From: Sminthopsis crassicaudata
Taxonomy: Eukaryota
Length of the DNA: 64,000 bases
NCBI RefSeq assembly: GCF_048593235.1
Contig: NC_133621.1
Coordinates: 304,987,146-305,051,145 of the forward strand
Direction of reading: 5' to 3'
Position numbers and translations under genes: made by a program. Positions 11,660-63,093 of the stretch are shown piece by piece. Numbering within the stretch: the first letter of the stretch is position 1; each line of letters starts with the position of its first letter. Below the pieces are notes generated by a model. The model was not told the origin of the DNA, made no database searches, and saw nothing but the letters and a program-made list of their open reading frames with translations.

Positions 11660-14600
11660 TTACAGTGGGGTCTGTAGTGGGGACAGGGCGGGGAGTGTCA
11701 GGGTAAAGGGGCAGAGAACACCCTTCCCCCCCATAGGGAAGGGCTTCAGCTGGCGAGCCTCGAACTGCGCCGTTCCCTCGGACACAGTGAAGGTGGCCGT
11801 GACCTGCTGGTTGAGGCAGTAGATGGTGTTCCCCAGGACCGCACATCGGAGTGGGATGGGCTCTGGAAGGGGCAGGGGGGCGGCCTGGCTCCAGGACCCC
11901 GTGACCGTATTGTAGCGCATCACGGCGGCGCCGACCCCGCGTAACAGGTCAAAGCGGTACAGGAAGCCGCCCAGTGCCACCATGTCGCTGGAGCGCCGGT
12001 GGCTGGCACTGTAGGGGCACTCGGCCCAGCAGTCCCGCGGGGGACTGTACTTGAGCAAGCGGTAGAAGAGGTGGCCCCCCGTGACATAGATGTCCCCCCG
12101 GCAGGCCACGGCCTCGTGGGCCACGGGAAAGGTGCCCGCGGGGAGAGGGGCCCTCGAGGTCCAGTGGTCGGTGCGAGGGTCGTAGCACTCCATGCTATAG
12201 AGACACTCCCCTCCTATGGCGTAGAGAAGCCCCTCCAGGGCCACCAGCTTCAGCTGGGCCCGGGCCTGCAGCATGGGCCGGACTTGGGTCCAGATGTCGG
12301 TCAGCGGGTTGTAGCAGAAGACCTCGTTGGTACAGACGGCCCCAGGCCCCGAGCCCCTGATGCCCCCAGCCAGGAACAGGTAGTTGTGCATGGTGCACAG
12401 GCCACAGCCCCGGAGCGGGGCCTCCTCGGGCACCAGGGCCAGGGGCAGCCACGCGTTCCTGCCAGGCTCGAACATGTGCAGGTAAGTGCGGGCCACCGGC
12501 CCCGAGGGGGCGGCCGGCGGCTCCGTCGCTTGGGACCCCCCCGCCAAGCCCAGCCGGCTCCCCCCATAGGCGCTGGGCAGCACGAGCACCCCCAGCACGG
12601 CCTGGCCTCGGGTGCTCCGGAGAGCCAGAATCCGCTCACGGTCCCCCGCGCCCAGCTGCCGGTACAGCGGGGCGTCACCCAGCACCAGCAGGAAGTTGTC
12701 GCTCATGAGGGCATACACCTCCTCGGCCAGGGCCAGCTCGCCGTGCTGCTGGGCGAAGGCCAGGGCTTCCACGCAGCTGCCCAGGTCCAGGTGCCGCCGC
12801 AGGGCCGCCACGGTGCTGGAGAGGTCTTCCGGGGGGTGGCTGGGCTTGCGCTGCCCTTCCACCGTGCCCCAGGTTCCGGGACGCCGCAGGAAGGCCATCA
12901 GCTGGCTGTCCTGGAGTTGCCTTTCGGTGAGGGGGGCTACCAGCCCCACGGGGGTCTCCCTCTGAGAGGGGACTACTGGGCTCACCTTCTGGGCCAGGCT
13001 GTCGGCCATCTGGCAGATGCTGCGTTTCCGGGGGCGGGGTGCAGGCTGGCCATCGGGCACGGCCTCTCTGGGGGCCGCCGGCTCCGGCTTCCTTTCCGGG
13101 GGGTGGCCAGGGGCCTCCGGGGGAGCTGAGGGCCTCCGGGCAACACTTTGGAGCTCTGCTTTGGCCATCCTTTTCTCCTCCACTTGGGCCCCATTCAGGC
13201 CCCTGGGGTCGCTTGGAATGGGCGCTCCTGGGGTTTCCAACTTTTCTGAAGGTGGGGGAGCTCTAACCTTGGCCTGGGGCCCCTTAACCACTCCGTTTCC
13301 CCCTGGAGTCAGCTCCCCAGTCTTGCTGCCTGGGGAGGGCACAGCGGCAGGGCTGGTCCCAGGGGCCTCCCCCGGGGGCTTCTCTGGCCTGGGGAAGGGG
13401 TGGCTCCGCAAGACCATGGAAATGAGGTTTCCCCAGCTGCCACTGGCACCCTGGGGCAGAGCTCTGACCGACTGGCCACCCGGGGTTGGGTCTAGGGCTG
13501 GAGATACTGTCGGACTTTCAACCCCCGGAGGATTCTGGGTCACAGGTGGCAGATCCTTGAGCAATGAGGCTTGGGCAATGGGAGCTGAAGGAAGGAGTTC
13601 TGGGGGTGTAAGGGCTGAGGATGGGGATCCTGAGGGTGGAGTGGCTGAGATAGGAGACCCTGAAGGTGCAGGGATTGAGGTTAAAGATCCAGAGGATCCA
13701 GGAGTTAAAGATGGGGACCCTGAGGTTGCAGAAGCTGAAATTGGGGACCCAGAGAGTGGAGAGCTTGAGGTCAGGGACCCAGAGGGTGCAAGGGTTAAAG
13801 ATGGAGACCCTGAAGGTGCAGGGGTTAAAGATGGAGACCCAGAGGGGGCAGGGGTTAAAGATGGTGGCCCTGAGGGTGCAGGAGCTAAGGTTGGGGAACC
13901 TGAGGGTACAGGGGTTAAAGATAGAGACCCAGAGGGGGCAGGGGTTAAAGATGGTGGCCCTGAGGATGCAGGAGCTAAGGTTGGGGACCCTGAGGGTGCA
14001 GTGGCTGAGGTTGGGGACCCAGAGGGTGCAAGGGTTAAAGATGGAGATCCAGAGGGTGCAGGGGTTAAAGATGGAGACCCAGAGGAGGCAGGGGTTAAAG
14101 ATGTTGGCCCTGAGGGTGCAGGAGCTAAGGTTGGGGACCCTGAGAGTGCAGGGGTTAAAGATGGGGGCCCTGAGGGTGCAGGAGCTAAGGTTGGGGGCCC
14201 TGAGGGTGCAGGGGTTAAAGATGGGGGCCCTGAGGGTGCAGGGGCTGAGGAAGATGACACCATGGATACAGGGGCTGAAGACAAGGACCCTGAAGATGTA
14301 GGAGCTGAGGTCAAGGACCCTGGAGGTACAGGGGATGAGGTTGGAGACGCTGTAGGTGTAGGGACTGAGGAGGGGGGTCCTTGGGATGCAGAGCCTACAG
14401 ATGGGGACACTTTGAGTTCAGGGACTGAGGATAGGAACTCTTTGGGTTCAGGAGCTTTGGACACAGACCCTTTGGGTGCAGGGGCTGGGGAGGTGGGTCT
14501 TTTGGGTTCATGGATTGAGGACGGGCCCCCTGTGGATGCAGGGGCCGAGGATGGGGACCCTGTGGATGTGGGGGCCGAGGATGGGGACCCTGTGGATGTG

Positions 14601-16456
14601 GGGGCAGAAGACGGGGACCCTGTGGATGTGGGGGCCGAGGACGGGGACCCGGTGGATGCAGAGGCTGGGGAGGTGGGCCCTTTGGGTACAGGAACTGAGG
14701 ATGGGGACTCTTTGGGTGAAGGAGCTGACAGGGGGGCTTTGGACAGAGACACTGTGGGTACAGGGGTTGAGGTCAAGGACCCTGAGGGTGCTGGGGCTAA
14801 GACTGGAGGCCCTTTAAGTACAGGAGCTGAGGCTAGAGAGCCTGTCAGCGCAGGGGCTGAGGTCAGAGACTCTGTGGGTGCAGGGACTGAGGCTGGAGAT
14901 TGCATGGGAGGAGGTGCTCCAGGGGCAGTGACTGAAGTTAGAGACCCTAGGGCCCTGCGGGCTCTGGGAGAAGGACCTGAGGAAGAGGATGAGCTCAACC
15001 CTGGACCCTTCTGGATAATGGGGGCGTTTTCTTGAGCCTGGATATCCCCGGCTCCTCCCTCAGTGCATGTAGGAGTATTCTCAGGCCCCTTCTTGGCCCT
15101 ACTCCCCGGCTCTGATGCAACTAGAGGCACTGAACCTGGGGAAGTGCTAGGAAGCTGGGGGTCCCGGGCTGGGCTGGCGCCCTCTGGGGAGGCAGGGGTC
15201 GGGACTGGCCCCTTCCTCCTTTCCTCGGGATCTGAAGAGACCTGGCTGGGAGCTGGGACGGCCTCTGGGGTCTCCTTCCTGATGGGCAGTGGGGACCCTT
15301 GGCCATAGCCCTCCAGCTGCCGGATCAGGGCGTTGGGGGGCCGGCTAAAACTGCTGGTTATCAGGAGTTCTCTCTCCTTCCAGGGCCACCTCTCCTCCGG
15401 GTCTGGGGCCACTGCTTGGGCGGGGGCACCCCATGCTGGAAGCTCCGTCCCCCCAGGGCTGGGCTCTCCACCTCCTGACTCACTGTCTGCTCCCCCTTGA
15501 GCAGCAGTTGGGGCTAACCCGGCTCCTGAGGAAAGGAAGAGGTGCCCTTCCCCCCCACCGCTCCTCCAGGCCGTATCTCGGGGGCTCCCAGATGGTGGGG
15601 CCCATTTCTGGTCAGGCGCAGGGCCAGCGGGAGCTTCTTCTGGAGCCGAGAATCTGGTGCCCGGGGCCTGGGGCAGGAGCCCACCGAGCAGTGGGTCCCC
15701 AGCAGCCAGGGAGCTTCCCGCATCAATGGCATCCCACACACTCACCACCGTACCCAGGCTGAAGGGATCCGGCCCCGGCCCTCGAACTCGGCTCCTGATC
15801 CTGGGACTGGGCGCCCCCTCCTGCCGCTGGCCCGAGGGCCCTCGTCCATCGTCTGGCTTCTCTCCAGGCGGGGCCGCTACCAGGAGGCTGGGCCGCCCCG
15901 GGCCCCCGAGTCCCCCCTCACTCCAGGGGTCCGGGTGCCTTGGAGTGAAATGGATCAGGAGGGGGCCTGGCCCTGGTGGAGCTCCAGCTCTGCTCTGCGG
16001 GCGAAGGGGCGCCTGGGAGCCATCTCCAGGCTGCTTTGGGGGGGCCACCCTGGAAGTTATCTTGGGTGCTCTGACCTGGGGAGCGGCCCGTGGGGCCAGG
16101 CCTCCGTCTGGGCTCCCGGGAGACTCGGGGTCTTTGGGGCCTCTGCCGGGCCGCTCCCTGGGGCTGGGCGCCGGGGGGCCTGATGGAGTCTCGGGGGCCT
16201 TGGTCTCCTGGTCCTCGGAACTGAGCCTGGCCTTTGGGGCGGGGGTCTGGACCGTCTTTCCGTCCTGGGGACTCTGAGTCGGGCCAGCCTCCAGGCTCCG
16301 CTTGTCCACGTCCTTGTCTTGCTCGGACCCGGATCCTAACCAGTGCAGGGCCAAGGCGGTGGCGGCCACCACGGCCAGCGCCAGCAGGGCCTGGGCCAGA
16401 GTCAGGGCCACCGAGTCCTCCCCATCGCCATCCGCCTCGGAGAAGCTCAGGGCCAT
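11660..16456 (-). CDS. KLHDC7B: Kelch domain-containing protein 7B, single coding exon, 1598 aa
   Basis: Uninterrupted ORF with good Kozak context (gagATGG). N-terminal hydrophobic LALAVVAATALALHWLGSG matches the long human isoform as I recall it. C-terminal BACK-like (LRRHLDLGSCVEALAFAQQHG) and kelch repeats (NYLFLAGG, LYAIGGECLYSMECYDP, IYVTGG). Syntenic position between SYCE3 and ODF3B. Confidence 0.95.
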   Translation of the reverse strand: MALSFSEADGDGEDSVALTLAQALLALAVVAATALALHWLGSGSEQDKDVDKRSLEAGPTQSPQDGKTVQTPAPKARLSSEDQETKAPETPSGPPAPSPRERPGRGPKDPESPGSPDGGLAPRAAPQVRAPKITSRVAPPKQPGDGSQAPLRPQSRAGAPPGPGPLLIHFTPRHPDPWSEGGLGGPGRPSLLVAAPPGEKPDDGRGPSGQRQEGAPSPRIRSRVRGPGPDPFSLGTVVSVWDAIDAGSSLAAGDPLLGGLLPQAPGTRFSAPEEAPAGPAPDQKWAPPSGSPRDTAWRSGGGEGHLFLSSGAGLAPTAAQGGADSESGGGEPSPGGTELPAWGAPAQAVAPDPEERWPWKERELLITSSFSRPPNALIRQLEGYGQGSPLPIRKETPEAVPAPSQVSSDPEERRKGPVPTPASPEGASPARDPQLPSTSPGSVPLVASEPGSRAKKGPENTPTCTEGGAGDIQAQENAPIIQKGPGLSSSSSSGPSPRARRALGSLTSVTAPGAPPPMQSPASVPAPTESLTSAPALTGSLASAPVLKGPPVLAPAPSGSLTSTPVPTVSLSKAPLSAPSPKESPSSVPVPKGPTSPASASTGSPSSAPTSTGSPSSAPTSTGSPSSAPTSTGSPSSAPASTGGPSSIHEPKRPTSPAPAPKGSVSKAPEPKEFLSSVPELKVSPSVGSASQGPPSSVPTPTASPTSSPVPPGSLTSAPTSSGSLSSAPVSMVSSSSAPAPSGPPSLTPAPSGPPTLAPAPSGPPSLTPALSGSPTLAPAPSGPTSLTPASSGSPSLTPAPSGSPSLTLAPSGSPTSATAPSGSPTLAPASSGPPSLTPAPSGSLSLTPVPSGSPTLAPAPSGPPSLTPAPSGSPSLTPAPSGSPSLTLAPSGSLTSSSPLSGSPISASATSGSPSLTPGSSGSLTSIPAPSGSPISATPPSGSPSSALTPPELLPSAPIAQASLLKDLPPVTQNPPGVESPTVSPALDPTPGGQSVRALPQGASGSWGNLISMVLRSHPFPRPEKPPGEAPGTSPAAVPSPGSKTGELTPGGNGVVKGPQAKVRAPPPSEKLETPGAPIPSDPRGLNGAQVEEKRMAKAELQSVARRPSAPPEAPGHPPERKPEPAAPREAVPDGQPAPRPRKRSICQMADSLAQKVSPVVPSQRETPVGLVAPLTERQLQDSQLMAFLRRPGTWGTVEGQRKPSHPPEDLSSTVAALRRHLDLGSCVEALAFAQQHGELALAEEVYALMSDNFLLVLGDAPLYRQLGAGDRERILALRSTRGQAVLGVLVLPSAYGGSRLGLAGGSQATEPPAAPSGPVARTYLHMFEPGRNAWLPLALVPEEAPLRGCGLCTMHNYLFLAGGIRGSGPGAVCTNEVFCYNPLTDIWTQVRPMLQARAQLKLVALEGLLYAIGGECLYSMECYDPRTDHWTSRAPLPAGTFPVAHEAVACRGDIYVTGGHLFYRLLKYSPPRDCWAECPYSASHRRSSDMVALGGFLYRFDLLRGVGAAVMRYNTVTGSWSQAAPLPLPEPIPLRCAVLGNTIYCLNQQVTATFTVSEGTAQFEARQLKPFPMGGKGVLCPFTLTLPALSPLQTPL
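13600..14890 (-). repeat. Coding 30-bp minisatellite (10-aa unit, about 43 copies) inside KLHDC7B
   Basis: + strand unit about GGGGTTAAAGATGGAGACCCAGAGGGTGCA; protein units SGSPSLTPAP and TGSPSSAPTS. Homogeneous sub-arrays at about 13780-14260 and 14521-14670. Confidence 0.93.
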
Positions 16457-28347: not shown

Positions 28348-28700
28348 TTCTAAGGTCCCTCCGGGCTCTGACATCCCCTCTTCTAAGCTCCCTTCCAGCC
28401 CTGACATCCCCTGTTCTAAGGCCCCTCCCAGCTTTGACATCCCCTGTTCTAAGGCCCCTCTCAGCTCTGACATTATCTATTCTAAGCTCCCTCCCAGCTT
28501 TGTCATTCTCTGTTCTAAGGCCCCTCCCAGCTCTGGGATTATCTGTTCTGAGGTCTCTCCCAGCTAACTTTCATTGTTCTAGGCCATTTCCAGCTGTGAC
28601 CTTCACTGTTCTAAGTTCTCCCAGTTCTGCCTTTCATAGTTCTAAGACCCCTCCCCAACTCTGATATTCTCTGTTCTAAGGTTCCTCTCAGCTGACTCAG
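28348..28700 (+). repeat. 33-bp minisatellite, about 11 units, derived from a MIR 3' tail
   Basis: Unit about TTCTAAGGCCCCTCCCAGCTCTGACATCCCCTG; TTCTA recurs at about 33-nt spacing from 28348 to about 28674. Confidence 0.85.
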
Positions 28701-29499: not shown

Positions 29500-33775
<4,276 letters not shown>

Positions 33776-48748: not shown

Positions 48749-48884
48749 NNNNNNNNNNNNNNNNNNNNNNNNNNNNNNNNNNNNNNNNNNNNNNNNNNNN
48801 NNNNNNNNNNNNNNNNNNNNNNNNNNNNNNNNNNNNNNNNNNNNNNNNNNNNNNNNNNNNNNNNNNNNNNNNNNNNNNNNNNNN
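48749..48884. other. Assembly gap (136 N) just upstream of TYMP
   Basis: Run of N. Confidence 0.99.
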
Positions 48885-52400: not shown

Positions 52401-55121
52401 TTGGGGTGCTAGTGGGAGCACAAGGTGGGCAGGTCCAGGTGGAGTTGTGCACTTTGTGATTGGGACTGGAGTTTTAGACTCAGGACTCATCTGGGCTAAT
52501 ATTAGCCACCAGAGAGTGGGTAAGTCAACAAGAAAGAGCGATTAAAGTGTGAAGAGAAGAGGGCTTAGAGCAACCTTGAATAGCAGCCAACTTTAAAGGC
52601 AGGGAGAAGGTGAGCCAGGAAAAGGAACTTGGGAATGAGTCAGGAAGGGAGGAGGAAACAACCTGAGGCAAGAGAGAGAATTCCAGAACAGATACTCAAA
52701 TGACTCATAAGCTACAGAGACAGCAACAAGGGGAGGCCTTTGAGAGACTTCTGCAGGATTAGGACTGTGCTGGGTGAGGATCCAGAGTGCACCTGGACTC
52801 GATGGGGAAAACTCCGTGCTTGTATATAAAGGAGAATTTCCTCTACAAGGGGGTAGCCACCCATTGCTTGGATACCTCCGGTGACAGGGAACTCACTACC
52901 TAATTTAGCAGGCAATGGAGCAGTAAATGTGACAGACAGAAGAGACAGACGATTGAGACTAGTAGTAAAGTCAGCCCAGGCCATGGGAAGCCCTAAACAT
53001 GCTGGTTGCAAACTGGAAGGAAAATGAGAGCGTCTTAGAATCTGAAATGAAGGGCCCTGAAAAGATCACCCATTTCTGTTTTCATGTTTGCCAAAAAGCA
53101 GACTTCATATCCAAAGGACTCTGAACCAAGGAGCCGGAACTGAGAAAATGAAATTGGTTGGGAAACCCTCCTGATCAATAAGTGGCTCAGAAATGGATGA
53201 AAAAAGGCTTCCAAACCAGAGACAAGCAGAATTTATAGTCGTGGGCCAGTTTGTCAAGATGAATTATCAAAGAGGAAGGGACCCTTGTACACAGTTGGGG
53301 TCTAATAAGCAAATTACCTGTGGGCCAGCCAGCACCAGTCCTTCGAAGACTCTGGCACCCTGCGCTGCAGCTCATGCCCTAGTATGACCGAGGGCTTCTG
53401 AAATCCGTTTCAGACTAGGGATCTGGTTATTCCCCAGATAAAAATAGCATGTTTTTAGTTTTGTTTGTTTTTTAAGTAATTAAGAAGGAAAAAACGACAT
53501 GAAGTCAGAAAAAAAAATAAATCAGAAATGTTCTCAGCAGGAATTTCCCAAGCTCCTCTTCCCCAACAGCATCCCCCAGCAAAGCATATATTACATGCTC
53601 TCTCCCTTCCCCTCCTCCAAAAGTCTAAGCTCTGCAAGGGGCAGAACTGGTCACACTTTTGGTATTGGGAGCTCCAGCCTGGCTTACAGTAGGCACTTAA
53701 TAGATGCTTATTGATCAATTGGTAGAGACAGGAGCCTAAGACCCGGTTGCCGTGGTATGAGGCGTGTCTTAGGAGGGCTGGCCCTATGGTGAGGGGGCTC
53801 GGGGGAGAGGAGCACGGAGATCTGTTAGGAAGCTGCTGACATTTATGAGAGGACACAGGACTCTGGGAGGGCAGCGTGAGGCAGGTGAGGGAAGGGAAGG
53901 ACGTGTGGGGGTAAGATCGGGACTCGGTGGGTGGTTGATGTGGCAGATGAAGGAGAGAGGAGGTTTCTAGCCCAGGAGGCCGCAGAGGAGGGTTGGGGAG
54001 GACGGACACAGGGAGGGGAGCACTCCGGGCAGCAGGCCCAGCAGAACAGGGAGTGGGCCGAGAATGACCCGGCCTGCTCTCTGCAGGTGGGCGTGGGGGC
54101 CCGCCTGGGGGTCCGGGTGGCGGCCGCGCTGACGACGATGGACAACCCTCTGGGCCGCTGCGTGGGCCACGGGCTCGAAGTGGAGGAGGCCTTGCGGTGT
54201 CTGGAGGGAGGAGGCCCCCCGGACTTACGGGACCTCGTCACCCAGTTAGGTGTGTGAAGGGAGGGGGAGGGGGGGAAGGGCTCCTCTGTCCCCGCTCACC
54301 GTCCTGCCTAACCCCGTCCCCAGGAGGATCCCTGCTGTGGCTGAACGGCCAGGCTCCAACCCTGACCCAGGGGACAGCCCGAGTGGGGGCCTCGCTGGAC
54401 GACGGCTCTGCCCTGCGCCAGTTCCGGGCCATGCTGGAGGCCCAGGGGGTGGCCCCCGCGCTGGCCCAGGCTCTGTGCTCGGGGTCTCCCGCCCAGCGCC
54501 GAGGCCTGCTCCCCACGGCCCCCACCCAGGAGGAGCTGAGAACAGCTTCAGAGGGTGAGGAGAAACCCGATTTCAAGGCCCGCCCCGGCCAGCACAAACC
54601 TTCCCCCTTACCTTTGTACGCGTCAGTCACCCCGTGCCCCATGCTCCCCTCCCCTCCCCCCACTAACCCTCCCCTCCCCCCAGGGACGGTGGAGAAGATC
54701 CAGGCCCTGCCCCTGGCCCAGGTTCTCCACGAGCTGGGGGCTGGCCGGACCCGGGCAGGAGAGCCCCTCCGCCACGACGTGGGGCTGGAGCTGCTGGTGA
54801 GCGTGGGACAGAGGGTCAGTGCAGGTGAGAGCGAAGACCGAGATCAGCACCAGACCCGCTCCCGGGCCTCCTTTAAGGGCTCCCGGCCGGTGGGGCGGGG
54901 ACAAGTACTCCGAGCCCCCTCCCACCGCGGCGGGCTCGCGGTGACGGCTCTCCCCGCCACTGCCAGGGACCGCCTGGATCCGCGTGCACCACCAGGGCCC
55001 CGGCCTGAGCCCGCGGCACTGCCAGAAGCTGCAGGAGGCGCTGACGCTGGGCAGCGGGGAGCCCTTCGTGCCCGAGCCCTGCTTTCGGGAGCTCATCCTG
55101 CCCCCCTCCGTGAGCGGCTGA
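49493..55121 (+). CDS. TYMP: Thymidine phosphorylase (467 aa)
   Basis: Exons 49493-49520, 49592-49726, 49843-50045, 50330-50428, 50619-50748, 50906-51024, 54087-54249, 54324-54554, 54684-54824 and 54967-55121 (TGA) total 1404 nt, in phase. Active-site motifs [35 protein letters not shown] and SILSKK are intact. A probable non-coding exon ends at 49397 (GAG|gtaaga). Confidence 0.95.
51290..51515 (+). repeat. CT-rich polypyrimidine low-complexity tract in a TYMP intron
   Basis: Direct reading. Confidence 0.8.
52400..53050 (-). mobile_element. Degraded L2 fragment in a TYMP intron
   Basis: Purine-rich L2-type text (gagaagagggcttagagcaaccttgaatagcagccaactttaaaggcaggg). Confidence 0.5.
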
Positions 55122-55234
55122 GCCCCGGCTTCCAGGCGCTTCCTTCGGGCGAGATCTGCGCGCGTCCCAACCCGGGGCGCTGTCCGCGTGCCTCCCGGGC
55201 CCCCTCGGTTGGGGAAGGGGGGGCGTCTTCTCGG

Positions 55235-55240
55235 AATAAA
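55235..55240 (+). terminator. Polyadenylation signal of TYMP
   Basis: AATAAA 114 nt after the stop. Confidence 0.8.
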
Positions 55241-55264
55241 GTGCCCGTTTCGGCTCGAACTCCG

Positions 55265-55830
55265 CTTGTCCGGGGGCGGGGCCCCTCCGGTCTGGTCTCT
55301 GGGTCCGTGCGCGCCGGGGGCGGGGCGATGACGTCACAGCCCCAAGTCCACGGGCATTCCGCGAGCCCGGCTGGTTCGCCGCTGGGGCTGGGGCCTGGGG
55401 GGCATTATGCGTAGGGTGGTGCGTGCACTTGGGGCGAAGAAAATGGGGGCTACGTGCGTATAGCGGGGACCACCGCCCTCGGCTGCGGAATTGGGAGTAA
55501 GAACGACAGACACTATGCGCCTCAGGGGCAGCAGGGGGCGCTCGCAAGCTTGGAAGGAGAGCCGGTCGTGCTCATGCGTGGTGTCTTCGGCCGTCGCCTC
55601 CCGGTTGCACTACATCCCTGCGCAGACTCAGCATAATTTCCTTTCCCCCGCTGGCCCCACCCCACACGCTGCGCATGCTCCATGGCCTCCAGTCCGAGGT
55701 GACTTCGTCACTTGCCGGCTGAACGCGAATTCGGACTTCATCGCGCGTGTATCCGTCTCGCGAGATCCCAAAAAAACTTCCGGATACGAGACCGGCGAGC
55801 CCGCGAACAGAGGTGAGCGCATGCGCCCCC
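55265..55830 (+). promoter_or_regulatory. SCO2 CpG-island promoter and non-coding exon 1 (donor at 55812/55813)
   Basis: GC boxes, CRE TGACGTCA 55329-55336, TCTCGCGAGA 55756-55765, ETS ACTTCCGG 55776-55783, NRF1 GCGCATGCGC 55817-55826. Donor GAG|gtgagc; acceptor ttgcag| at 56262. Confidence 0.75.
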
Positions 55831-56276
55831 CCCTCCCCACACAGCTACCCTCTGGGTGCTGGGCTCCGGACGAACCTCCGCGCGCGGTCCTGTGCACGCT
55901 GGCTCCAGCCCAGATCCCAAGTTCAGACTGCAGTGGTCAACACTGGCTAAGCGCCTGCTGTGTCCCGAGCCTGTGCTCTGTGCTAACAGTCTAATAAAGG
56001 GGAGACCAGATCCGAGGGCGGGGGTACCACCGGGGCAAAGACCCCGTGCTTCTCGGGGTCGGGCCGGCGCACAGCCCCCCGTGAGCGGGGCACCAAGGAG
56101 CGGCCCACGTGCGGCCAAGGCCGCCTCCGAACTCTCCGCTTGAGGAGTACCCCTTCATCCCCGGCTCCCCACTCTGCTCCCTCCCCCCTCTGTGCCCCCT
56201 ACCCCGTCCCCCACTGCCCTTTCACCTCTGCCCCCTCCCACCCTCTGCTCCCTGTGTTGCAGGGCTCCAGAGTGAG

Positions 56277-57026
56277 ATGTGGCACCTGCGGGCTCCCGGC
56301 CCCTGGCGCGTGGCCCTGGCCTCCCTGCGCCGGGCCGCCCGGCCCTACTCCAGCTCCCAGGAAGCGGGCGGCGGGCCCCCGAGGGCCCTGGGGCTGCGCA
56401 CGCGCCTGCTGGTGACAGGGCTCTTCGGGACCGGGCTGGCGGCGGCTTGGCTGGTGGCCCGGGCGGAGAAGGAGCGGCGGCAGCAGCGGCGGCGGATCGA
56501 GGCGCTGCGCAGCGCGGCCGTGGGCCAGGGGGACTTTGACTTGGTGGACCACACGGGCCGCCCCAGGCGCAAGGCCGACTTCGCGGGCCAGTGGGTGCTC
56601 CTGTACTTCGGCTTCACGCACTGCCCGGACATCTGCCCCGAGGAGCTGGAGAAGCTGGCCGCGGTGGTGCGCAGGCTCGAGGCCGAGCCCGGCCTGCCCC
56701 CCGTGCAGCCCCTCTTCGTCACCGTGGACCCCGAGCGGGACGACGTGGCCGCCGTGGGGAACTACGTGCGCGAGTTCCACCCGCGGCTGCTGGGGCTGAC
56801 CGGCACCCCGGAGCAGGTGAGCCGGGCCGGCCGCAACTACCGGGTCTACTACAGCGCGGGGCCTCCCGACGAGGATCAGGACTACATAGTGGACCACTCC
56901 ATCATCATCTACCTGCTCAATCCCGACGGCCTTTTCACCGACTACTACAACCGGAGCAAGACGGAGGAGCAGATCACAGACAGCGTGCGGCGCCACATGG
57001 CGGCCTTCCGCAGCATCATGGACTGA
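56277..57026 (+). CDS. SCO2: Cytochrome c oxidase assembly copper chaperone SCO2 (249 aa, single coding exon)
   Basis: ATG 56277 lies 14 nt after the acceptor. Arg-rich presequence, TM segment, [24 protein letters not shown] (CxxxC), FVTVDPERD and [18 protein letters not shown] (Cu-binding His). Confidence 0.97.
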
Positions 57027-60400: not shown

Positions 60401-63093
60401 AGACCGAGACGTCCATGGGCATCTCCTCGGGCCGCTCCGCGTCTGGGGAGAGGAGAATGAGAAGGGCCGAGCTCGTGCTGGGGACGCCAGCCGGCCACGC
60501 CGCCCAGCCCTTCACCCTTCTGCAGTTGGGCCTTCGCAGCAAAGAGCTCACTCCGGGAGAAGGGGGCTCAAGGCAGAGGGTGACAGGGTAGGTGGAGGCC
60601 CTGCCCTCGTGGGTGCTCATCTATAAAATGGGTCCAGCTCAAACTACATGCCCTGATGCAGGGCCTATCGTGCCTGGGGGGAGCTCGGCACAAGCAGCCA
60701 GTCCATCTCCCAGGCTGACCGCACCCTGCTGGGGGCTCCCCGGCCATCCCGGCCTGCTCCCAGGCTCCAGCTGCCCCCTCTGTGCCATGGCCGGGATGCC
60801 CGCTTCACCTCCTGATGACCCTGATATCGGCCAGAGGGGTGCCCTGACGCCAAGACCTCAGCCCTCGCTTCTCAGTGGCCACTGGGAGGTTCCTTAGCTC
60901 TGAGTAGAAGCTGTTCCCTGCCTCCTGGCTCCAGACAGTAAGCTCTGGAAGGTGGGGGCTGCCCAGCCCCCAGCATGGAGTCTGGCACCCAGTAGGTGCT
61001 TAATAAATGGTTACTGGATGGAGAGAATAATCACTGCCCCTTGGCTTTTACTGTCTAAGACTCTCGTGCAGAACAATTCCCCCAATGCGAACAATTGGGT
61101 CCTGAGCCTGGGCAAGGGGTCACCAACTCCCCTCCCCCCAGTCTCCTTCTGGCCGTGACCCTCACCGGGCTGGGTCCTTGGCATGGTCTGCTCCATTGGG
61201 GACAGGCCTCCTGGCTCCAGCAGGAATGCACCGCTGGCGTGAGGGATGGAGGTGTTCATCCTGAAATCCTTGCGACTGGCCAGGACCTCCCCTCGGCGGC
61301 TGTGCTGGCAGACAACATGCTCTGAGAAGAGGGGTGGAGACCCATGTCCCACCTCAGGGGGGCCGCAGGCTCAGGGAGGCAGAGGCCCATGCCCTGCCTC
61401 AGGAGGCTGCAGGCTCAGGGCAGACACAGAACAGGACCCCCAGAGAGGCAGCGGAGTACTGGGGGTGGGGGCTGGGGTCCTGTACCTGTAGAGTGGGTTG
61501 CTCTTCTTCTCTTCTTCGTCAGGGGGCACCAGGGCCATGGGCACCAGGGGAATGACAGGCACGGCCTGTTGGGGGCACACAGAGTCACCGGATGTTGGAG
61601 GAGGGCTCCCCCAGAGCCCGGCCACCTCCCAGGCCCTCCCTCCCCTTCCCATCACCACCGCCCCCAAGATCTGCCCAAAGGACCAGGAGCATCGGGGAGA
61701 AGGCGCCACTTACGGTGGGAGACTGGTCATCCTTCAGGTCTATGTTTGTGCGGGGGTCAGGAAAGTCATCGAGGGACAGAAACTGTGGGGAGACAGAGGC
61801 AACAGCTAGCAGGAGCCGCGGTGCCCAGGGAAGGCCCCAGAGGCGGGAGCCGAGGGCACGTGGGCCCCGGGGAGCCTCACCTCTTCCTCGGGCTCAGGGC
61901 GCGTGCTGCAGCTATTGTCACCATCCTGCCCGTCGGGCTGCGCCGACGCCAGCTGCTTATTTCGCCTGGGAGGAGAGAGGCAAGCGGGCATGGGTCAGCT
62001 CTTCCCTGGCCATCAAGGTCGTGCAGCTATCAGAGCAGCCGGGGAGCTCCGGGGGGGCCTCCTCCCCAAGTGGCTGCCCCGCTGAAGGTGCCCGGTCTCC
62101 GCCCAGCCACCTGTCCTTCCAGATTTCCTGTTTGCTCATTGTTACCAAACCCCAATGGGGCAGAGCAGAGAAGGATCACTGGGGGCGTCTGTGGCACACA
62201 GCAGGCCCAGGTTCTCACGCTCTGCTGCGTGTCCCACCGCCCTTACTTTTTTCCTGAGATGAAATCCAGAGCCTGGTAGACCAGTGAGTAGAGGTACTCC
62301 ACCTGCCAAAAGGGGGGCACGGGCTGAGGAGAGCGGCCAACGGCAGCCCCCGGGCTTCCCTCCCAGCCAACCCAGCATGATGGCCGAGCGGAGCCGGTCC
62401 CAGCGCATCAGGAACCGGCACGGGGATCTGAGAGCGTGTGTACATGTGTCTGTGCCCTAGGGACACTTCCCCGGGAGGGCCCGTTTTGAGAGCCCCCCCC
62501 CCCAAGCATGGCCGCAGCCAGTGTGCCCCAGGGAATGAGCCGTGGGCAGCCCACAGGGGTGACACGATGGGCCTTGGACAAGGAGCTGGAGCTGCTGCCC
62601 TGGTAGGGGGCAAGCAAGAGCGTGCCCCACGGGTGCTACTCTCAAGAGGAGAACTGAGGGTATGGAGGGAAGGGAAGGCCGCTCTCTCAAAGGCAGGAAA
62701 CATCCCCTGTGCCATCACCACAAAGGGCTACCACGACTGGGCTCCAAAAAGGAGCCCGAGGAAACAAGGCCCACAGGCCAGCCCCCCAAACAGAGGGAAC
62801 ACGGCATGCACACTGCCTCCCCGCGGCCCCCGGGGGTCACGGCGTGCACGCTCTGCCTCCCCGCGGCCCCCGGGGGTCACGGCGTGCACGCTCTGCCTCC
62901 CCGCGGCCCCCGGGGGTCACGGCGTGCACGCTCTGCCTCCCCGCGGCCCCCGGGGGTCACAGTGTGCCCAATCAGTGCTTGGAGTGCTCACCTTTTTACT
63001 GTAGACACAGGCAGACCCCTGGATCAGCAGTGCAGCCTCGATGAAGTTCATGGTGGTTTTACCTTCATCAAAAGAAATGCAGATCTGGTCCAG
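57424..63093 (-). CDS. NCAPH2: Condensin-2 complex subunit H2 (kleisin), exons 2-20; exon 1 lies beyond the window
   Basis: Exons 5' to 3': 62992-63093, 62247-62302, 61881-61965, 61714-61782, 61486-61565, 61166-61299, 60347-60442, 60016-60113, 59538-59615, 59257-59323, 58975-59082, 58815-58865, 58662-58732, 58390-58483, 58253-58309, 58106-58158, 57918-58019, 57683-57832, 57424-57564; 1692 nt, in phase. Motifs [61 protein letters not shown] and [19 protein letters not shown]. One GC donor (59537) and two weak GT donors (60346, 58389) lower confidence in the middle exons. Confidence 0.93.
62801..62960. repeat. 40-bp CpG-rich VNTR (3.5 perfect units plus a degenerate half) in NCAPH2 intron 2
   Basis: Unit CCGCGGCCCCCGGGGGTCACGGCGTGCACGCTCTGCCTCC at 62821, 62861, 62901 and 62941 (half). 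Confidence 0.95.

What the first reader, a model, noticed from the sequence alone, without database searches (positions are those of the whole stretch)
13600..14890. KLHDC7B carries a ~430-aa decapeptide Pro/Ser/Thr array encoded by a 30-bp coding VNTR
Seen: about 43 in-frame 10-aa units (SGSPSLTPAP, SGPPTLAPAP, TGSPSSAPTS), a homogeneous 5-unit block at 14521-14670, a ~16-unit block at about 13780-14260 with two alternating variants (higher-order structure), and degenerate flanks. This pattern indicates ongoing unequal crossover with the frame maintained. The protein is 1598 aa, longer than the roughly 1200-aa long human isoform I recall. Inference: a lineage-specific, probably length-polymorphic spacer dense in S/T-P sites (phospho-array if cytosolic, mucin-like if luminal) sets the distance between the membrane anchor and the kelch propeller. 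KLHDC7B is linked to hearing loss and tumours in humans.
Basis: partly seen in the sequence, partly recalled or inferred. Interest (0 to 1): 0.7.

Follow-up and report, generated by a model that had tools for sequence, protein, structure and literature searches.

The report
Coding 30-bp repeat in marsupial KLHDC7B
A marsupial's copy of the hearing gene KLHDC7B carries a real, in-frame run of about 44 ten-residue Pro/Ser/Thr-rich units in its floppy middle part; marsupials share the run, it still changes length, and it is a fairly ordinary coding minisatellite with no shown special function.

Summary
A single 1598-aa ORF (11660-16456, minus strand) is the KLHDC7B orthologue. It has a conserved N-terminal membrane anchor, a roughly 1170-aa low-confidence linker and a C-terminal helical bundle plus six-bladed Kelch propeller, and TYMP and SCO2 lie nearby. 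The linker holds about 44 decapeptide units (13574-14905): period 30 bp, no indels, one in-frame 12-bp phase shift, and multi-unit duplications at 95-97% identity.

The array is not species-specific. Wombat has the same unit and the same block order, and opossum has a degenerate version. Sixteen eutherian, amphibian and lungfish orthologues lack the unit. Elephant has an independent 20-aa array at the same site, and 34 of 58 mammalian orthologues show significant short repeats there.

Units resemble each other more within a species than between species. One other sample carries a 60-bp, two-unit, in-register deletion in the most homogeneous block. In-register turnover with the frame kept is therefore supported.

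The functional reading is not shown. N-part length varies threefold among mammals, constraint on the peptide is weak, and S/T-P density equals what the composition predicts. The flank charges predict a cytosolic array, which argues against a mucin. I obtained no RNA evidence. The total copy number is not confirmed by any spanning read.

The parts
11660..16456 (-). Single-exon ORF of 1598 aa: the KLHDC7B orthologue, long isoform
   Evidence: ORF list and translation. Best matches are proteins named KLHDC7B: wombat 91%, opossum 87% and eutherians 65-74% identity over aa 1130-1598, against 38-42% for KLHDC7A. It is colinear with the orthologues from the first Met to the stop.
16337..16411 (-). 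N-terminal hydrophobic signal-anchor helix, aa 16-40
   Evidence: It is the only segment with 19-residue Kyte-Doolittle hydropathy above 1.6 (maximum 2.16). The N flank has net charge -5 and the C flank -1. The core LALAVVAATALALHW is conserved in all mammals aligned. Phobius predicts a transmembrane helix at aa 26-47 of the mouse and human long isoforms (PMC12820229).
13574..14905 (-). Decapeptide array, about 44 units of 30 bp, aa 518-961 (S 28%, P 24%, A 12%, T 10%)
14714..14725 (-). The only register break in the array: 4 extra residues (12 bp, in frame) between the first 6 units and the other 38
   Evidence: Unit identity matrix and re-registered units.
14516..14665 (-). Homogeneous T-type block of 5 units (TGSPSSAPTS type). 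It lies inside a stretch of degenerate K-type units.
   Evidence: Units 80-100% identical at DNA level, two of them identical.
14553..14612 (-). 60 bp (2 units) missing from a contig of another sample (run X10): an in-register, in-frame length variant
   Evidence: A 1917-nt contig joins 14552 to 14613, with 29 letters shared at the joint. The joined form needs one 31-mer that is absent from the window. No X10 contig covers the skipped part.
13604..14233 (-). S-type block of 21 units (SGSPSLTPAP / SGPPTLAPAP type) with 2-unit and 8-unit higher-order duplications
   Evidence: The P[ST]L[TA]P variant occurs 11 times here, 0 times in wombat and once in opossum.
13415..13417 (-). Met1014 within the conserved motif WGNLISMVLRSHPFP. 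It corresponds to the start of the putative short isoform, 53 aa downstream of the array.
   Evidence: The motif was found in 58 of 66 mammalian orthologues. The protein from this Met is 594 aa in four of the five named primate models (the fifth, a truncated isoform model, 499) and 585 aa here. The two isoforms differ only in which Met is used (PMC12820229). The 594-aa length of the human short form is from memory.
11681..12823 (-). Folded module, aa 1212-1592: helical bundle plus six-bladed Kelch propeller
   Evidence: Pfam Kelch_1 at 1.5e-24. PDB sequence matches to the KEAP1 Kelch domain at 1e-31. In the AlphaFold2 model pLDDT is mostly 80-97 for model residues 210-590 and 32-61 (mostly under 50) before them. 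Foldseek matches the KEAP1 Kelch domain at 1e-20 with TM 0.78, and gives a 460-column match to BTB-BACK-Kelch KBTBD2.

Best explanation
The array is a genuine coding minisatellite inside the single coding exon of a marsupial KLHDC7B.

Shown:
- About 44 units of 30 bp encode an almost uncharged Ser/Pro/Ala/Thr-rich stretch of 444 aa.
- The stretch lies in a roughly 1170-aa linker that lacks a confident fold where modelled. The linker joins a conserved N-terminal membrane-anchor helix to a C-terminal helical-bundle plus Kelch-propeller module. The array ends 53 aa upstream of the Met used by the putative short isoform.
- The array dates back to the marsupial ancestor. It has since turned over by in-register unequal exchange or slippage. 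Different sub-blocks were amplified in different lineages: the S-type and T-type blocks here, the K-type 20-mer in wombat. A two-unit length variant exists within the same species label.

Inferred:
- The array is translated as part of the long isoform and faces the cytosol (N-out/C-in anchor).
- It acts only in bulk, as a flexible proline-rich tether.
- Its exact length and sequence are weakly constrained. Selection mainly removes frameshifts and stops, because the essential Kelch module lies downstream.
- The site is mutationally prone to such expansions across mammals.
For: Array and frame.

Orthology and architecture.

Marsupial-wide unit: 41, 28 and 12 matrix hits in the window, wombat and opossum, against 0-2 in 16 non-marsupial orthologues. 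Block order is colinear with wombat.

Concerted evolution: a unit's best match averages 7.9/10 within its own array and 6.7/10 in the other species, in both directions.

Recent multi-unit duplications at 95-97% identity.

60-bp in-register variant in run X10. A loose end at 13982 in the same run points to a different neighbouring unit in the S-type block.

Frame constraint: 0% indels, against 3-15% in three non-coding minisatellites of the same window.

Translation in this frame: in the young blocks and in the higher-order copies, pN/pS is 0.56-0.76 in the true frame and 0.86-1.59 in both shifted frames, in every comparison.

Weak constraint: pN/pS over all units is 0.85. The N-part ranges from about 300 to 1014 aa among mammals.

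Topology: flank charges -5 (N) and -1 (C), one hydrophobic segment.

Mouse data: long-isoform transcript in hair cells, protein at or near the plasma membrane, single exon (PMC12820229).
Against: - No RNA evidence for this species. The runs guessed to be RNA gave contigs with the same break points as the DNA runs and extend far beyond the ORF, so they are probably DNA.
- No contig spans the S-type block in any of the four runs, so the total unit number rests on the assembly alone.
- The pN/pS trend is consistent, but single comparisons are not significant (for example 13 of 77.7 synonymous sites changed against 18 of 162.3 non-synonymous sites).
- An open frame is not evidence in itself, because one antisense frame of the array also has no stop.
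- Topology rests on the charge-difference rule only.
- X10 differs from the window at about 1% of flanking sites, so it may be a divergent population or a mislabelled close relative rather than a within-population allele.
Confidence: 0.72

Rival explanations
1. The array is a tuned spacer whose length sets the distance between the membrane and the Kelch propeller, and it works as a proline-directed phosphorylation array.
For: The array lies between the anchor and the propeller. It has 38 S/T-P sites. The predicted topology is cytosolic. Large arrays arose independently at the same site in marsupials and in elephant. The mouse protein sits at the hair-cell plasma membrane, where structures of fixed spacing exist (PMC12820229).
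Against: The N-part varies threefold among mammals, and some bats, hedgehog and pika have almost no linker there. The S/T-P count equals the composition expectation of about 40. Constraint on the peptide is weak. A two-unit length variant is tolerated.
Confidence: 0.13
2. The anchor is type II (N-in/C-out), and the array is a luminal or extracellular mucin-like stalk with O-linked glycans.
For: 62% Pro/Ser/Thr in tandem units, a length variant, and an N-terminal anchor. These are the hallmarks of membrane mucin domains by established knowledge.
Against: The N flank is more acidic (-5) than the C flank (-1), which by the charge-difference rule puts the C-terminal side in the cytosol. The downstream module is a KEAP1/KBTBD-type helical bundle plus Kelch, a cytosolic architecture by established knowledge. 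Ser greatly outnumbers Thr (124 against 44).
Confidence: 0.08
3. The array is not part of the protein in this animal. Either only the short isoform from Met1014 is made, so the array is leader or upstream DNA, or an intron removes the array.
For: No RNA evidence here. An older opossum model (P0003) lacks 243 aa of the array present in the current NCBI model. One antisense frame is also open, so openness alone proves little.
Against: The ORF is unbroken from a conserved anchor (85% identity to wombat and opossum in aa 1-60) through the array to the Kelch module in three marsupials. The array has no indels. pN/pS is lowest in the annotated frame. The long-isoform transcript is expressed in mouse hair cells.
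Confidence: 0.05
4. The array is real, but its unit number in this assembly is wrong: collapsed or expanded in the S-type block.
For: No contig of four runs spans 13804-14212, and many 31-mers repeat there. Opossum models of different date differ by 243 aa in the array.
Against: All short contigs of X1 and X5 that were laid fit the window with no differences inside the array. The divergence between units (73-78% matches) is enough for long reads to assemble. Wombat has an array of similar size.
Confidence: 0.1

Closest known systems
Eutherian KLHDC7B long isoform (mouse, human; PMC12820229)
   Same: Single-exon gene, N-terminal transmembrane helix, long low-complexity linker, conserved MVLRSHPFP motif at the short-isoform Met, and a C-terminal Kelch module 65-74% identical.
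   Different: Eutherian proteins are 906-1395 aa and lack the xGSxxSAPxP decapeptide (0-2 matrix hits). The marsupial proteins are 1471-1598 aa because of the array.
Elephant KLHDC7B 20-residue Pro/Thr array (P0020, aa 556-726)
   Same: Tandem in-frame array in the same interval, ending 91 aa upstream of the conserved motif. It is Pro/Thr/Ala-rich and nearly perfect in periodicity.
   Different: The unit differs in length and sequence (best matrix score 3.3) and is absent from manatee, tenrec and aardvark. It is therefore an independent expansion, not a shared one.
Mucin-type PTS tandem-repeat domains (for example the MUC1 20-residue VNTR; established knowledge, not tested here)
   Same: Pro/Ser/Thr-rich tandem units encoded by a coding minisatellite, with copy-number variation and concerted evolution.
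   Different: This array is predicted to be cytosolic, it is Ser-dominated, and it is joined to a cytosolic-type Kelch module. Glycosylation is untested.
Other coding minisatellites noted in this genome by the scan (DNAAF3 81-bp array, RRBP1 decapeptide array)
   Same: In-frame tandem arrays that lengthen disordered parts of conserved proteins in the same animal (AI notes, unchecked).
   Different: Different genes, units and compositions. I did not examine them.

Membership tests
KLHDC7B orthologue | C-terminal six-bladed Kelch propeller preceded by a helical bundle, without a BTB domain | tested here: met
   Pfam finds Kelch_1 and Kelch_6 and no BTB. PDB sequence matches to the KEAP1 Kelch domain. 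AlphaFold2 model and Foldseek search.
KLHDC7B orthologue | Closer to proteins named KLHDC7B than to the paralogue KLHDC7A | tested here: met
   65-91% identity to KLHDC7B of 60 or more mammals, against 38-42% to KLHDC7A of birds, reptiles and amphibians.
KLHDC7B orthologue | Conserved neighbourhood (TYMP, SCO2 nearby, as on human 22q13.33; the human gene order is from memory) | tested here: met
   A PYNP_C domain at 54197-55414 and a SCO1/SenC domain at 56109-57026.
KLHDC7B orthologue | Single coding exon with an N-terminal transmembrane helix (long isoform) | tested here: met
   A continuous 4797-nt ORF colinear with the orthologues. One hydrophobic helix at aa 16-40. The mouse gene has a single exon.
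Coding minisatellite (VNTR) | Head-to-tail units of 10-100 bp, many copies | tested here: met
   30 bp in about 44 copies.
Coding minisatellite (VNTR) | Unit length a multiple of three, with the reading frame kept through the array | tested here: met
   No stop, no indel, and one 12-bp in-frame shift.
Coding minisatellite (VNTR) | Copy number varies among individuals | tested here: inconclusive
   One of four samples has a 60-bp in-register deletion. The evidence is assembled contigs, not reads, and that sample differs at about 1% of flanking sites. The S-type block is unresolved in all runs.
Mucin-type PTS domain | Pro/Thr/Ser-rich tandem repeats | tested here: met
   62% P+S+T.
Mucin-type PTS domain | Luminal or extracellular location | tested here: not met
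   The charge-difference rule predicts N-out/C-in, which places the array in the cytosol. This is a prediction only.
Mucin-type PTS domain | Dense O-GalNAc glycosylation | not testable with these tools
   Needs glycoproteomics.
BTB-BACK-Kelch (KLHL/KBTBD) CUL3 adaptors | N-terminal BTB domain that binds CUL3 | tested here: not met
   No BTB or BACK family in Pfam at E up to 0.1. Only the helical bundle and the propeller align to KBTBD2.

The most novel reading that the evidence does not exclude
The interval just upstream of the short-isoform Met of KLHDC7B is a recurrent site of independent in-frame tandem expansion in mammals: marsupials, elephant, and smaller arrays in a bat, tenrec, camel and primates. 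This could reflect selection rather than mutation bias. Under that reading, the length of the proline-rich tether between the hair-cell membrane and the Kelch module is adjusted lineage by lineage, for instance to the spacing of the outer-hair-cell lateral wall, whose pillar components are still unidentified.
Probability: 0.08. Interest if true: 0.6.

Novelty: new member of a known kind. Interest (0 to 1): 0.3.

Why it matters
KLHDC7B is needed for hair-cell survival and hearing in mice and is a strong human age-related hearing-loss locus, yet its molecular function is unknown (PMC12820229).

The linker of its long isoform tolerates threefold length changes, repeated independent tandem expansions and a two-unit variant. 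The anchor, the MVLRSHPFP motif and the Kelch module stay fixed. This tells experimenters which parts can probably be deleted or shortened in constructs, and which are the places to look for function.

For genome annotation, the array is a place where gene models and assemblies disagree: opossum models of 1228 and 1471 aa differ inside it. As biology, it is one more example of a coding minisatellite in a disordered region.

Tried and rejected
I could not fetch the opossum locus or name the source record, so every cross-species comparison is at protein level, with only three marsupial proteins.

2. RNA support. The runs guessed to be RNA behave like DNA: they show the same contig break points as X1 and extend 2.5 kb past the stop and 1.1 kb past the start. 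Expression and splicing stay untested.

3. pN/pS over all 43 units (0.85) did not separate the true frame from shifted or antisense frames. Only the young blocks and the higher-order copies show a consistent, weak signal.

4. Antisense ORF 13017-15035 (672 aa, plus strand). I rejected it as a gene. It is open because the repeat has no stop in that frame and the flanks are GC-rich. The sense frame is the one continuous with the conserved anchor and Kelch module.

5. Two strictly alternating unit variants. Overall, lag 2 is no better than lag 1 (0.793 against 0.796). Alternation holds only for the first four or five S-type units.

6. Homology of the elephant unit to the marsupial unit: no signal. 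Low complexity makes deeper claims unsafe.

7. A literature search for KLHDC7B with 'tandem repeat' gave nothing on this array.

8. I did not run the large representative protein search or a second word search. The orthologue set already answered the question about eutherians.

Unlabelled proteins from Logan assemblies entered only the bulk statistics, and I did not look them up.
Full report
**What is there**

Tandem Repeats Finder finds a 30-bp period at 13600-14728 (37.6 copies, 73% matches, 0% indels). It finds a further piece at 14793-14899 and a 120-bp period at 13620-14250. The region lies inside one 1598-aa ORF on the minus strand, 11660-16456.

Read in that frame, the array is aa 518-961 (window 13574-14905). 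It has six units, then a 4-residue (12-bp) in-frame shift of register at 14714-14725, then 38 units with no indel. The consensus unit is SGSPSSAPAP.

The composition is S 28%, P 24%, A 12%, T 10%, L 8%, G 8%. There are 17 charged residues, one aromatic residue and no Cys in 444 aa.

A position matrix of the unit gives 41 non-overlapping hits, against 0.2 in composition-preserving shuffles.

**Higher-order structure**

The structure is real but is not a simple alternation.
- A 2-unit dimer is duplicated at 96.7% identity (aa 742-761 vs 762-781).
- 4-unit segments 8 units apart are 95% identical (aa 772-811 vs 852-891).
- Mean unit identity at lag 8 is 88.7% within the block, against 77-84% at other lags.
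- Two adjacent T-type units are identical.

**The gene**

- Pfam finds Kelch repeats at the C-terminus.
- Over aa 1130-1598 the best matches are proteins named KLHDC7B: wombat 91%, opossum 87%, about 60 eutherians 65-74%. KLHDC7A proteins are 38-42% identical.
- Exons with thymidine-phosphorylase and SCO1/SenC domains lie at 54.2-57.0 kb. This fits the TYMP-SCO2 neighbourhood of human KLHDC7B; the human gene order is from memory.
- The ORF is colinear with the orthologues from the first Met to the stop. It is therefore a single coding exon, as in mouse (PMC12820229).

**Architecture**

The only strongly hydrophobic segment is aa 16-40. Its core LALAVVAATALALHW is conserved across mammals.

An AlphaFold2 model of aa 1003-1598, built with 32 orthologues and paralogues, is confident only for aa 1212-1592. 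That part is a helical bundle followed by a six-bladed propeller. The region before it has pLDDT of 32-61, mostly below 50, apart from two short helices. Foldseek matches the KEAP1 Kelch domain (E 1e-20, TM 0.78). It also gives a 460-column match, bundle included, to the BTB-BACK-Kelch protein KBTBD2. There is no BTB domain.

The array therefore sits in a linker of about 1170 aa between the anchor and the folded module. Only the last 200 aa or so of that linker were modelled. For the rest, including the array, disorder is inferred from composition.

The array ends 53 aa upstream of the conserved motif MVLRSHPFP. The Met of that motif (aa 1014) corresponds to the start of the putative short isoform. 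The protein from that Met is 594 aa in four of the five named primate models and 585 aa here. The paper states that the two isoforms differ only in the Met used. The array is thus specific to the long isoform.

**How old and how widespread**

*Wombat.* KLHDC7B (1555 aa) holds the same decapeptide (28 matrix hits) in the same block order. T-type units come first, then K-type units, then a short stretch recognisably colinear with the window (QG.., PGSLTSAP..), then S-type units.

*Opossum.* The 1471-aa protein has a degenerate version with 12 hits. The array therefore goes back to the common ancestor of the marsupials sampled.

*Turnover since then.*
- The S-type block has about 21 units here and about 7 in wombat.
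- A K-type 20-mer is homogenised in wombat and degenerate here.
- The P[ST]L[TA]P variant occurs 11, 0 and 1 times in the window, wombat and opossum.
- A unit's best match averages 7.9/10 within its own array and 6.7/10 in the other species, in both directions.

This is the pattern of concerted evolution.

*Outside marsupials.* Sixteen eutherian, amphibian and lungfish orthologues give 0-2 matrix hits, close to shuffle expectation. Eutherians do not have this unit.

*The site itself is repeat-prone.*
- Elephant has about 8.5 copies of an unrelated 20-residue Pro/Thr unit in the same interval.
- A bat (12-aa period), tenrec (22 aa), camel and several primates have short arrays there.
- In 34 of 58 mammalian orthologues the best tandem score in the linker exceeds all 60 shuffles. 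In the 22 strongest cases listed, the repeat ends 30-250 residues upstream of the MVLRSHPFP motif.

*Length variation.* All length variation among mammalian KLHDC7B proteins is in the N-part, about 300 to 1014 aa. The part after the motif is 580-613 aa in all but five models, which are shorter.

**Is it still changing**

Contigs of four public runs of the same species label, from four studies, were laid on 12900-15600. X1 and X5 fit without differences inside the array.

In X10 a 1917-nt contig joins 14552 directly to 14613. That skips 60 bp, exactly two units of the homogeneous block, with 29 letters shared at the joint. The joined form needs one 31-mer that the window lacks, and no X10 contig covers the skipped part. 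This is an in-register, in-frame length variant of the kind unequal exchange or slippage makes.

A loose end at 13982 in the same run suggests a different unit neighbour in the S-type block as well.

Caveats:
- These are assembled contigs, not reads.
- X10 differs from the window at about 1% of flanking sites.
- No run resolves 13804-14212, so the total copy number rests on the assembly.

**Is it translated, and how constrained**

Openness alone is weak evidence, because one antisense frame of the array is also free of stops. Better evidence comes from four results:
- The frame is continuous with a conserved anchor and a conserved Kelch module in three marsupials.
- There are no indels across 38 units at 73% matches, whereas the three non-coding minisatellites of this window have 3-15% indels.
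- In the young blocks and between the higher-order copies, pN/pS is 0.56-0.76 in the annotated frame and 0.86-1.59 in both shifted frames, in every comparison.
- The long-isoform transcript is expressed in mouse hair cells.

The constraint is weak. Over all units pN/pS is 0.85. Single comparisons are not significant.

No RNA evidence for this species was obtained. The runs guessed to be RNA behave like DNA.

**Topology and the two functional readings**

The flank before the helix has net charge -5 and the flank after it -1. By the charge-difference rule, the C-terminal side, and with it the array and the Kelch module, should face the cytosol. This fits the KEAP1/KBTBD-like module. The mouse protein is seen at or near the hair-cell plasma membrane, which does not settle orientation.

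The mucin-like reading is therefore the less likely one.

The phospho-array reading is possible but has no specific support. The 38 S/T-P sites equal the roughly 40 expected from the composition alone.

The idea that the array sets a distance is weakened by the threefold range of N-part length among mammals and by the tolerated two-unit variant. As a rough estimate from the standard polymer scaling for unfolded chains (inference), the array adds under 10 nm to the mean end-to-end distance of the linker.

**Verdict**

This is a real coding minisatellite in a known gene. It is ancestral to marsupials, evolves in concert and probably varies in length. It lies in a disordered tether whose length and sequence are loosely constrained. 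The site is a recurrent place of in-frame expansion in mammals.

The paper library holds nothing on this array. The phenomenon is a familiar one, so it counts as a new member of a known kind and is of modest interest.

Another note of this scan calls the genome a dasyurid. I did not verify that. The identities to wombat (91%) and opossum (87%) are compatible with it.

**Limits**

- Only three marsupial proteins were available, and no marsupial DNA other than the window.

Noticed in passing
window 54197-55414 (+) and 56109-57026 (+): ORF pieces with a pyrimidine-nucleoside-phosphorylase C-terminal domain (TYMP-like) and a SCO1/SenC domain (SCO2-like). I used them only as synteny support.
   Followed up: partly
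window 13017-15035 (+): A 672-aa antisense ORF across the array (unit DGDPEGAGVK type). It is open because that frame of the repeat has no stop. I judged it spurious.
   Followed up: partly
window 13586-14905: CpG observed/expected is 0.10 in the array, against 0.40 in the 5' part of the ORF and 0.59 in the Kelch part. GC is 59% against 68-69%. GC skew is strong (+0.43 to +0.49 on the plus strand).
   Followed up: no
window 28348-28693: Non-coding minisatellite: 33-bp unit, 10.6 copies, with 66- and 99-bp higher-order periods and 3% indels.
   Followed up: no
window 32457-33359: Purine-rich degenerate repeats (periods 58, 107 and 206 bp; 6-15% indels). They create spurious ORFs of up to 352 aa on the minus strand with no Pfam match.
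   Followed up: partly
window 62813-62967: A 40-bp GC-rich unit, 3.9 copies, 98% identical.
   Followed up: no
window 30436-30790 and 48749-48884: Runs of N (355 and 136 bases). I left them as they are.
   Followed up: no
P0020 (elephant KLHDC7B) aa 556-726: A near-perfect 20-residue Pro/Thr array of about 8.5 copies. It is absent from manatee, tenrec and aardvark orthologues, so it is an independent expansion at the same site.
   Followed up: partly
P0003 vs P0004 (opossum KLHDC7B models): The 1228-aa model is identical to the 1471-aa NCBI model except that it lacks 243 aa inside the array. The cause is either an older collapsed assembly or a predicted intron in the repeat.
   Followed up: partly
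P0068, P0071, P0072 (salamander orthologues): The salamander orthologues are 2339-2379 aa, with long N-parts and no tandem periodicity. The N-part can also grow without repeats.
   Followed up: no
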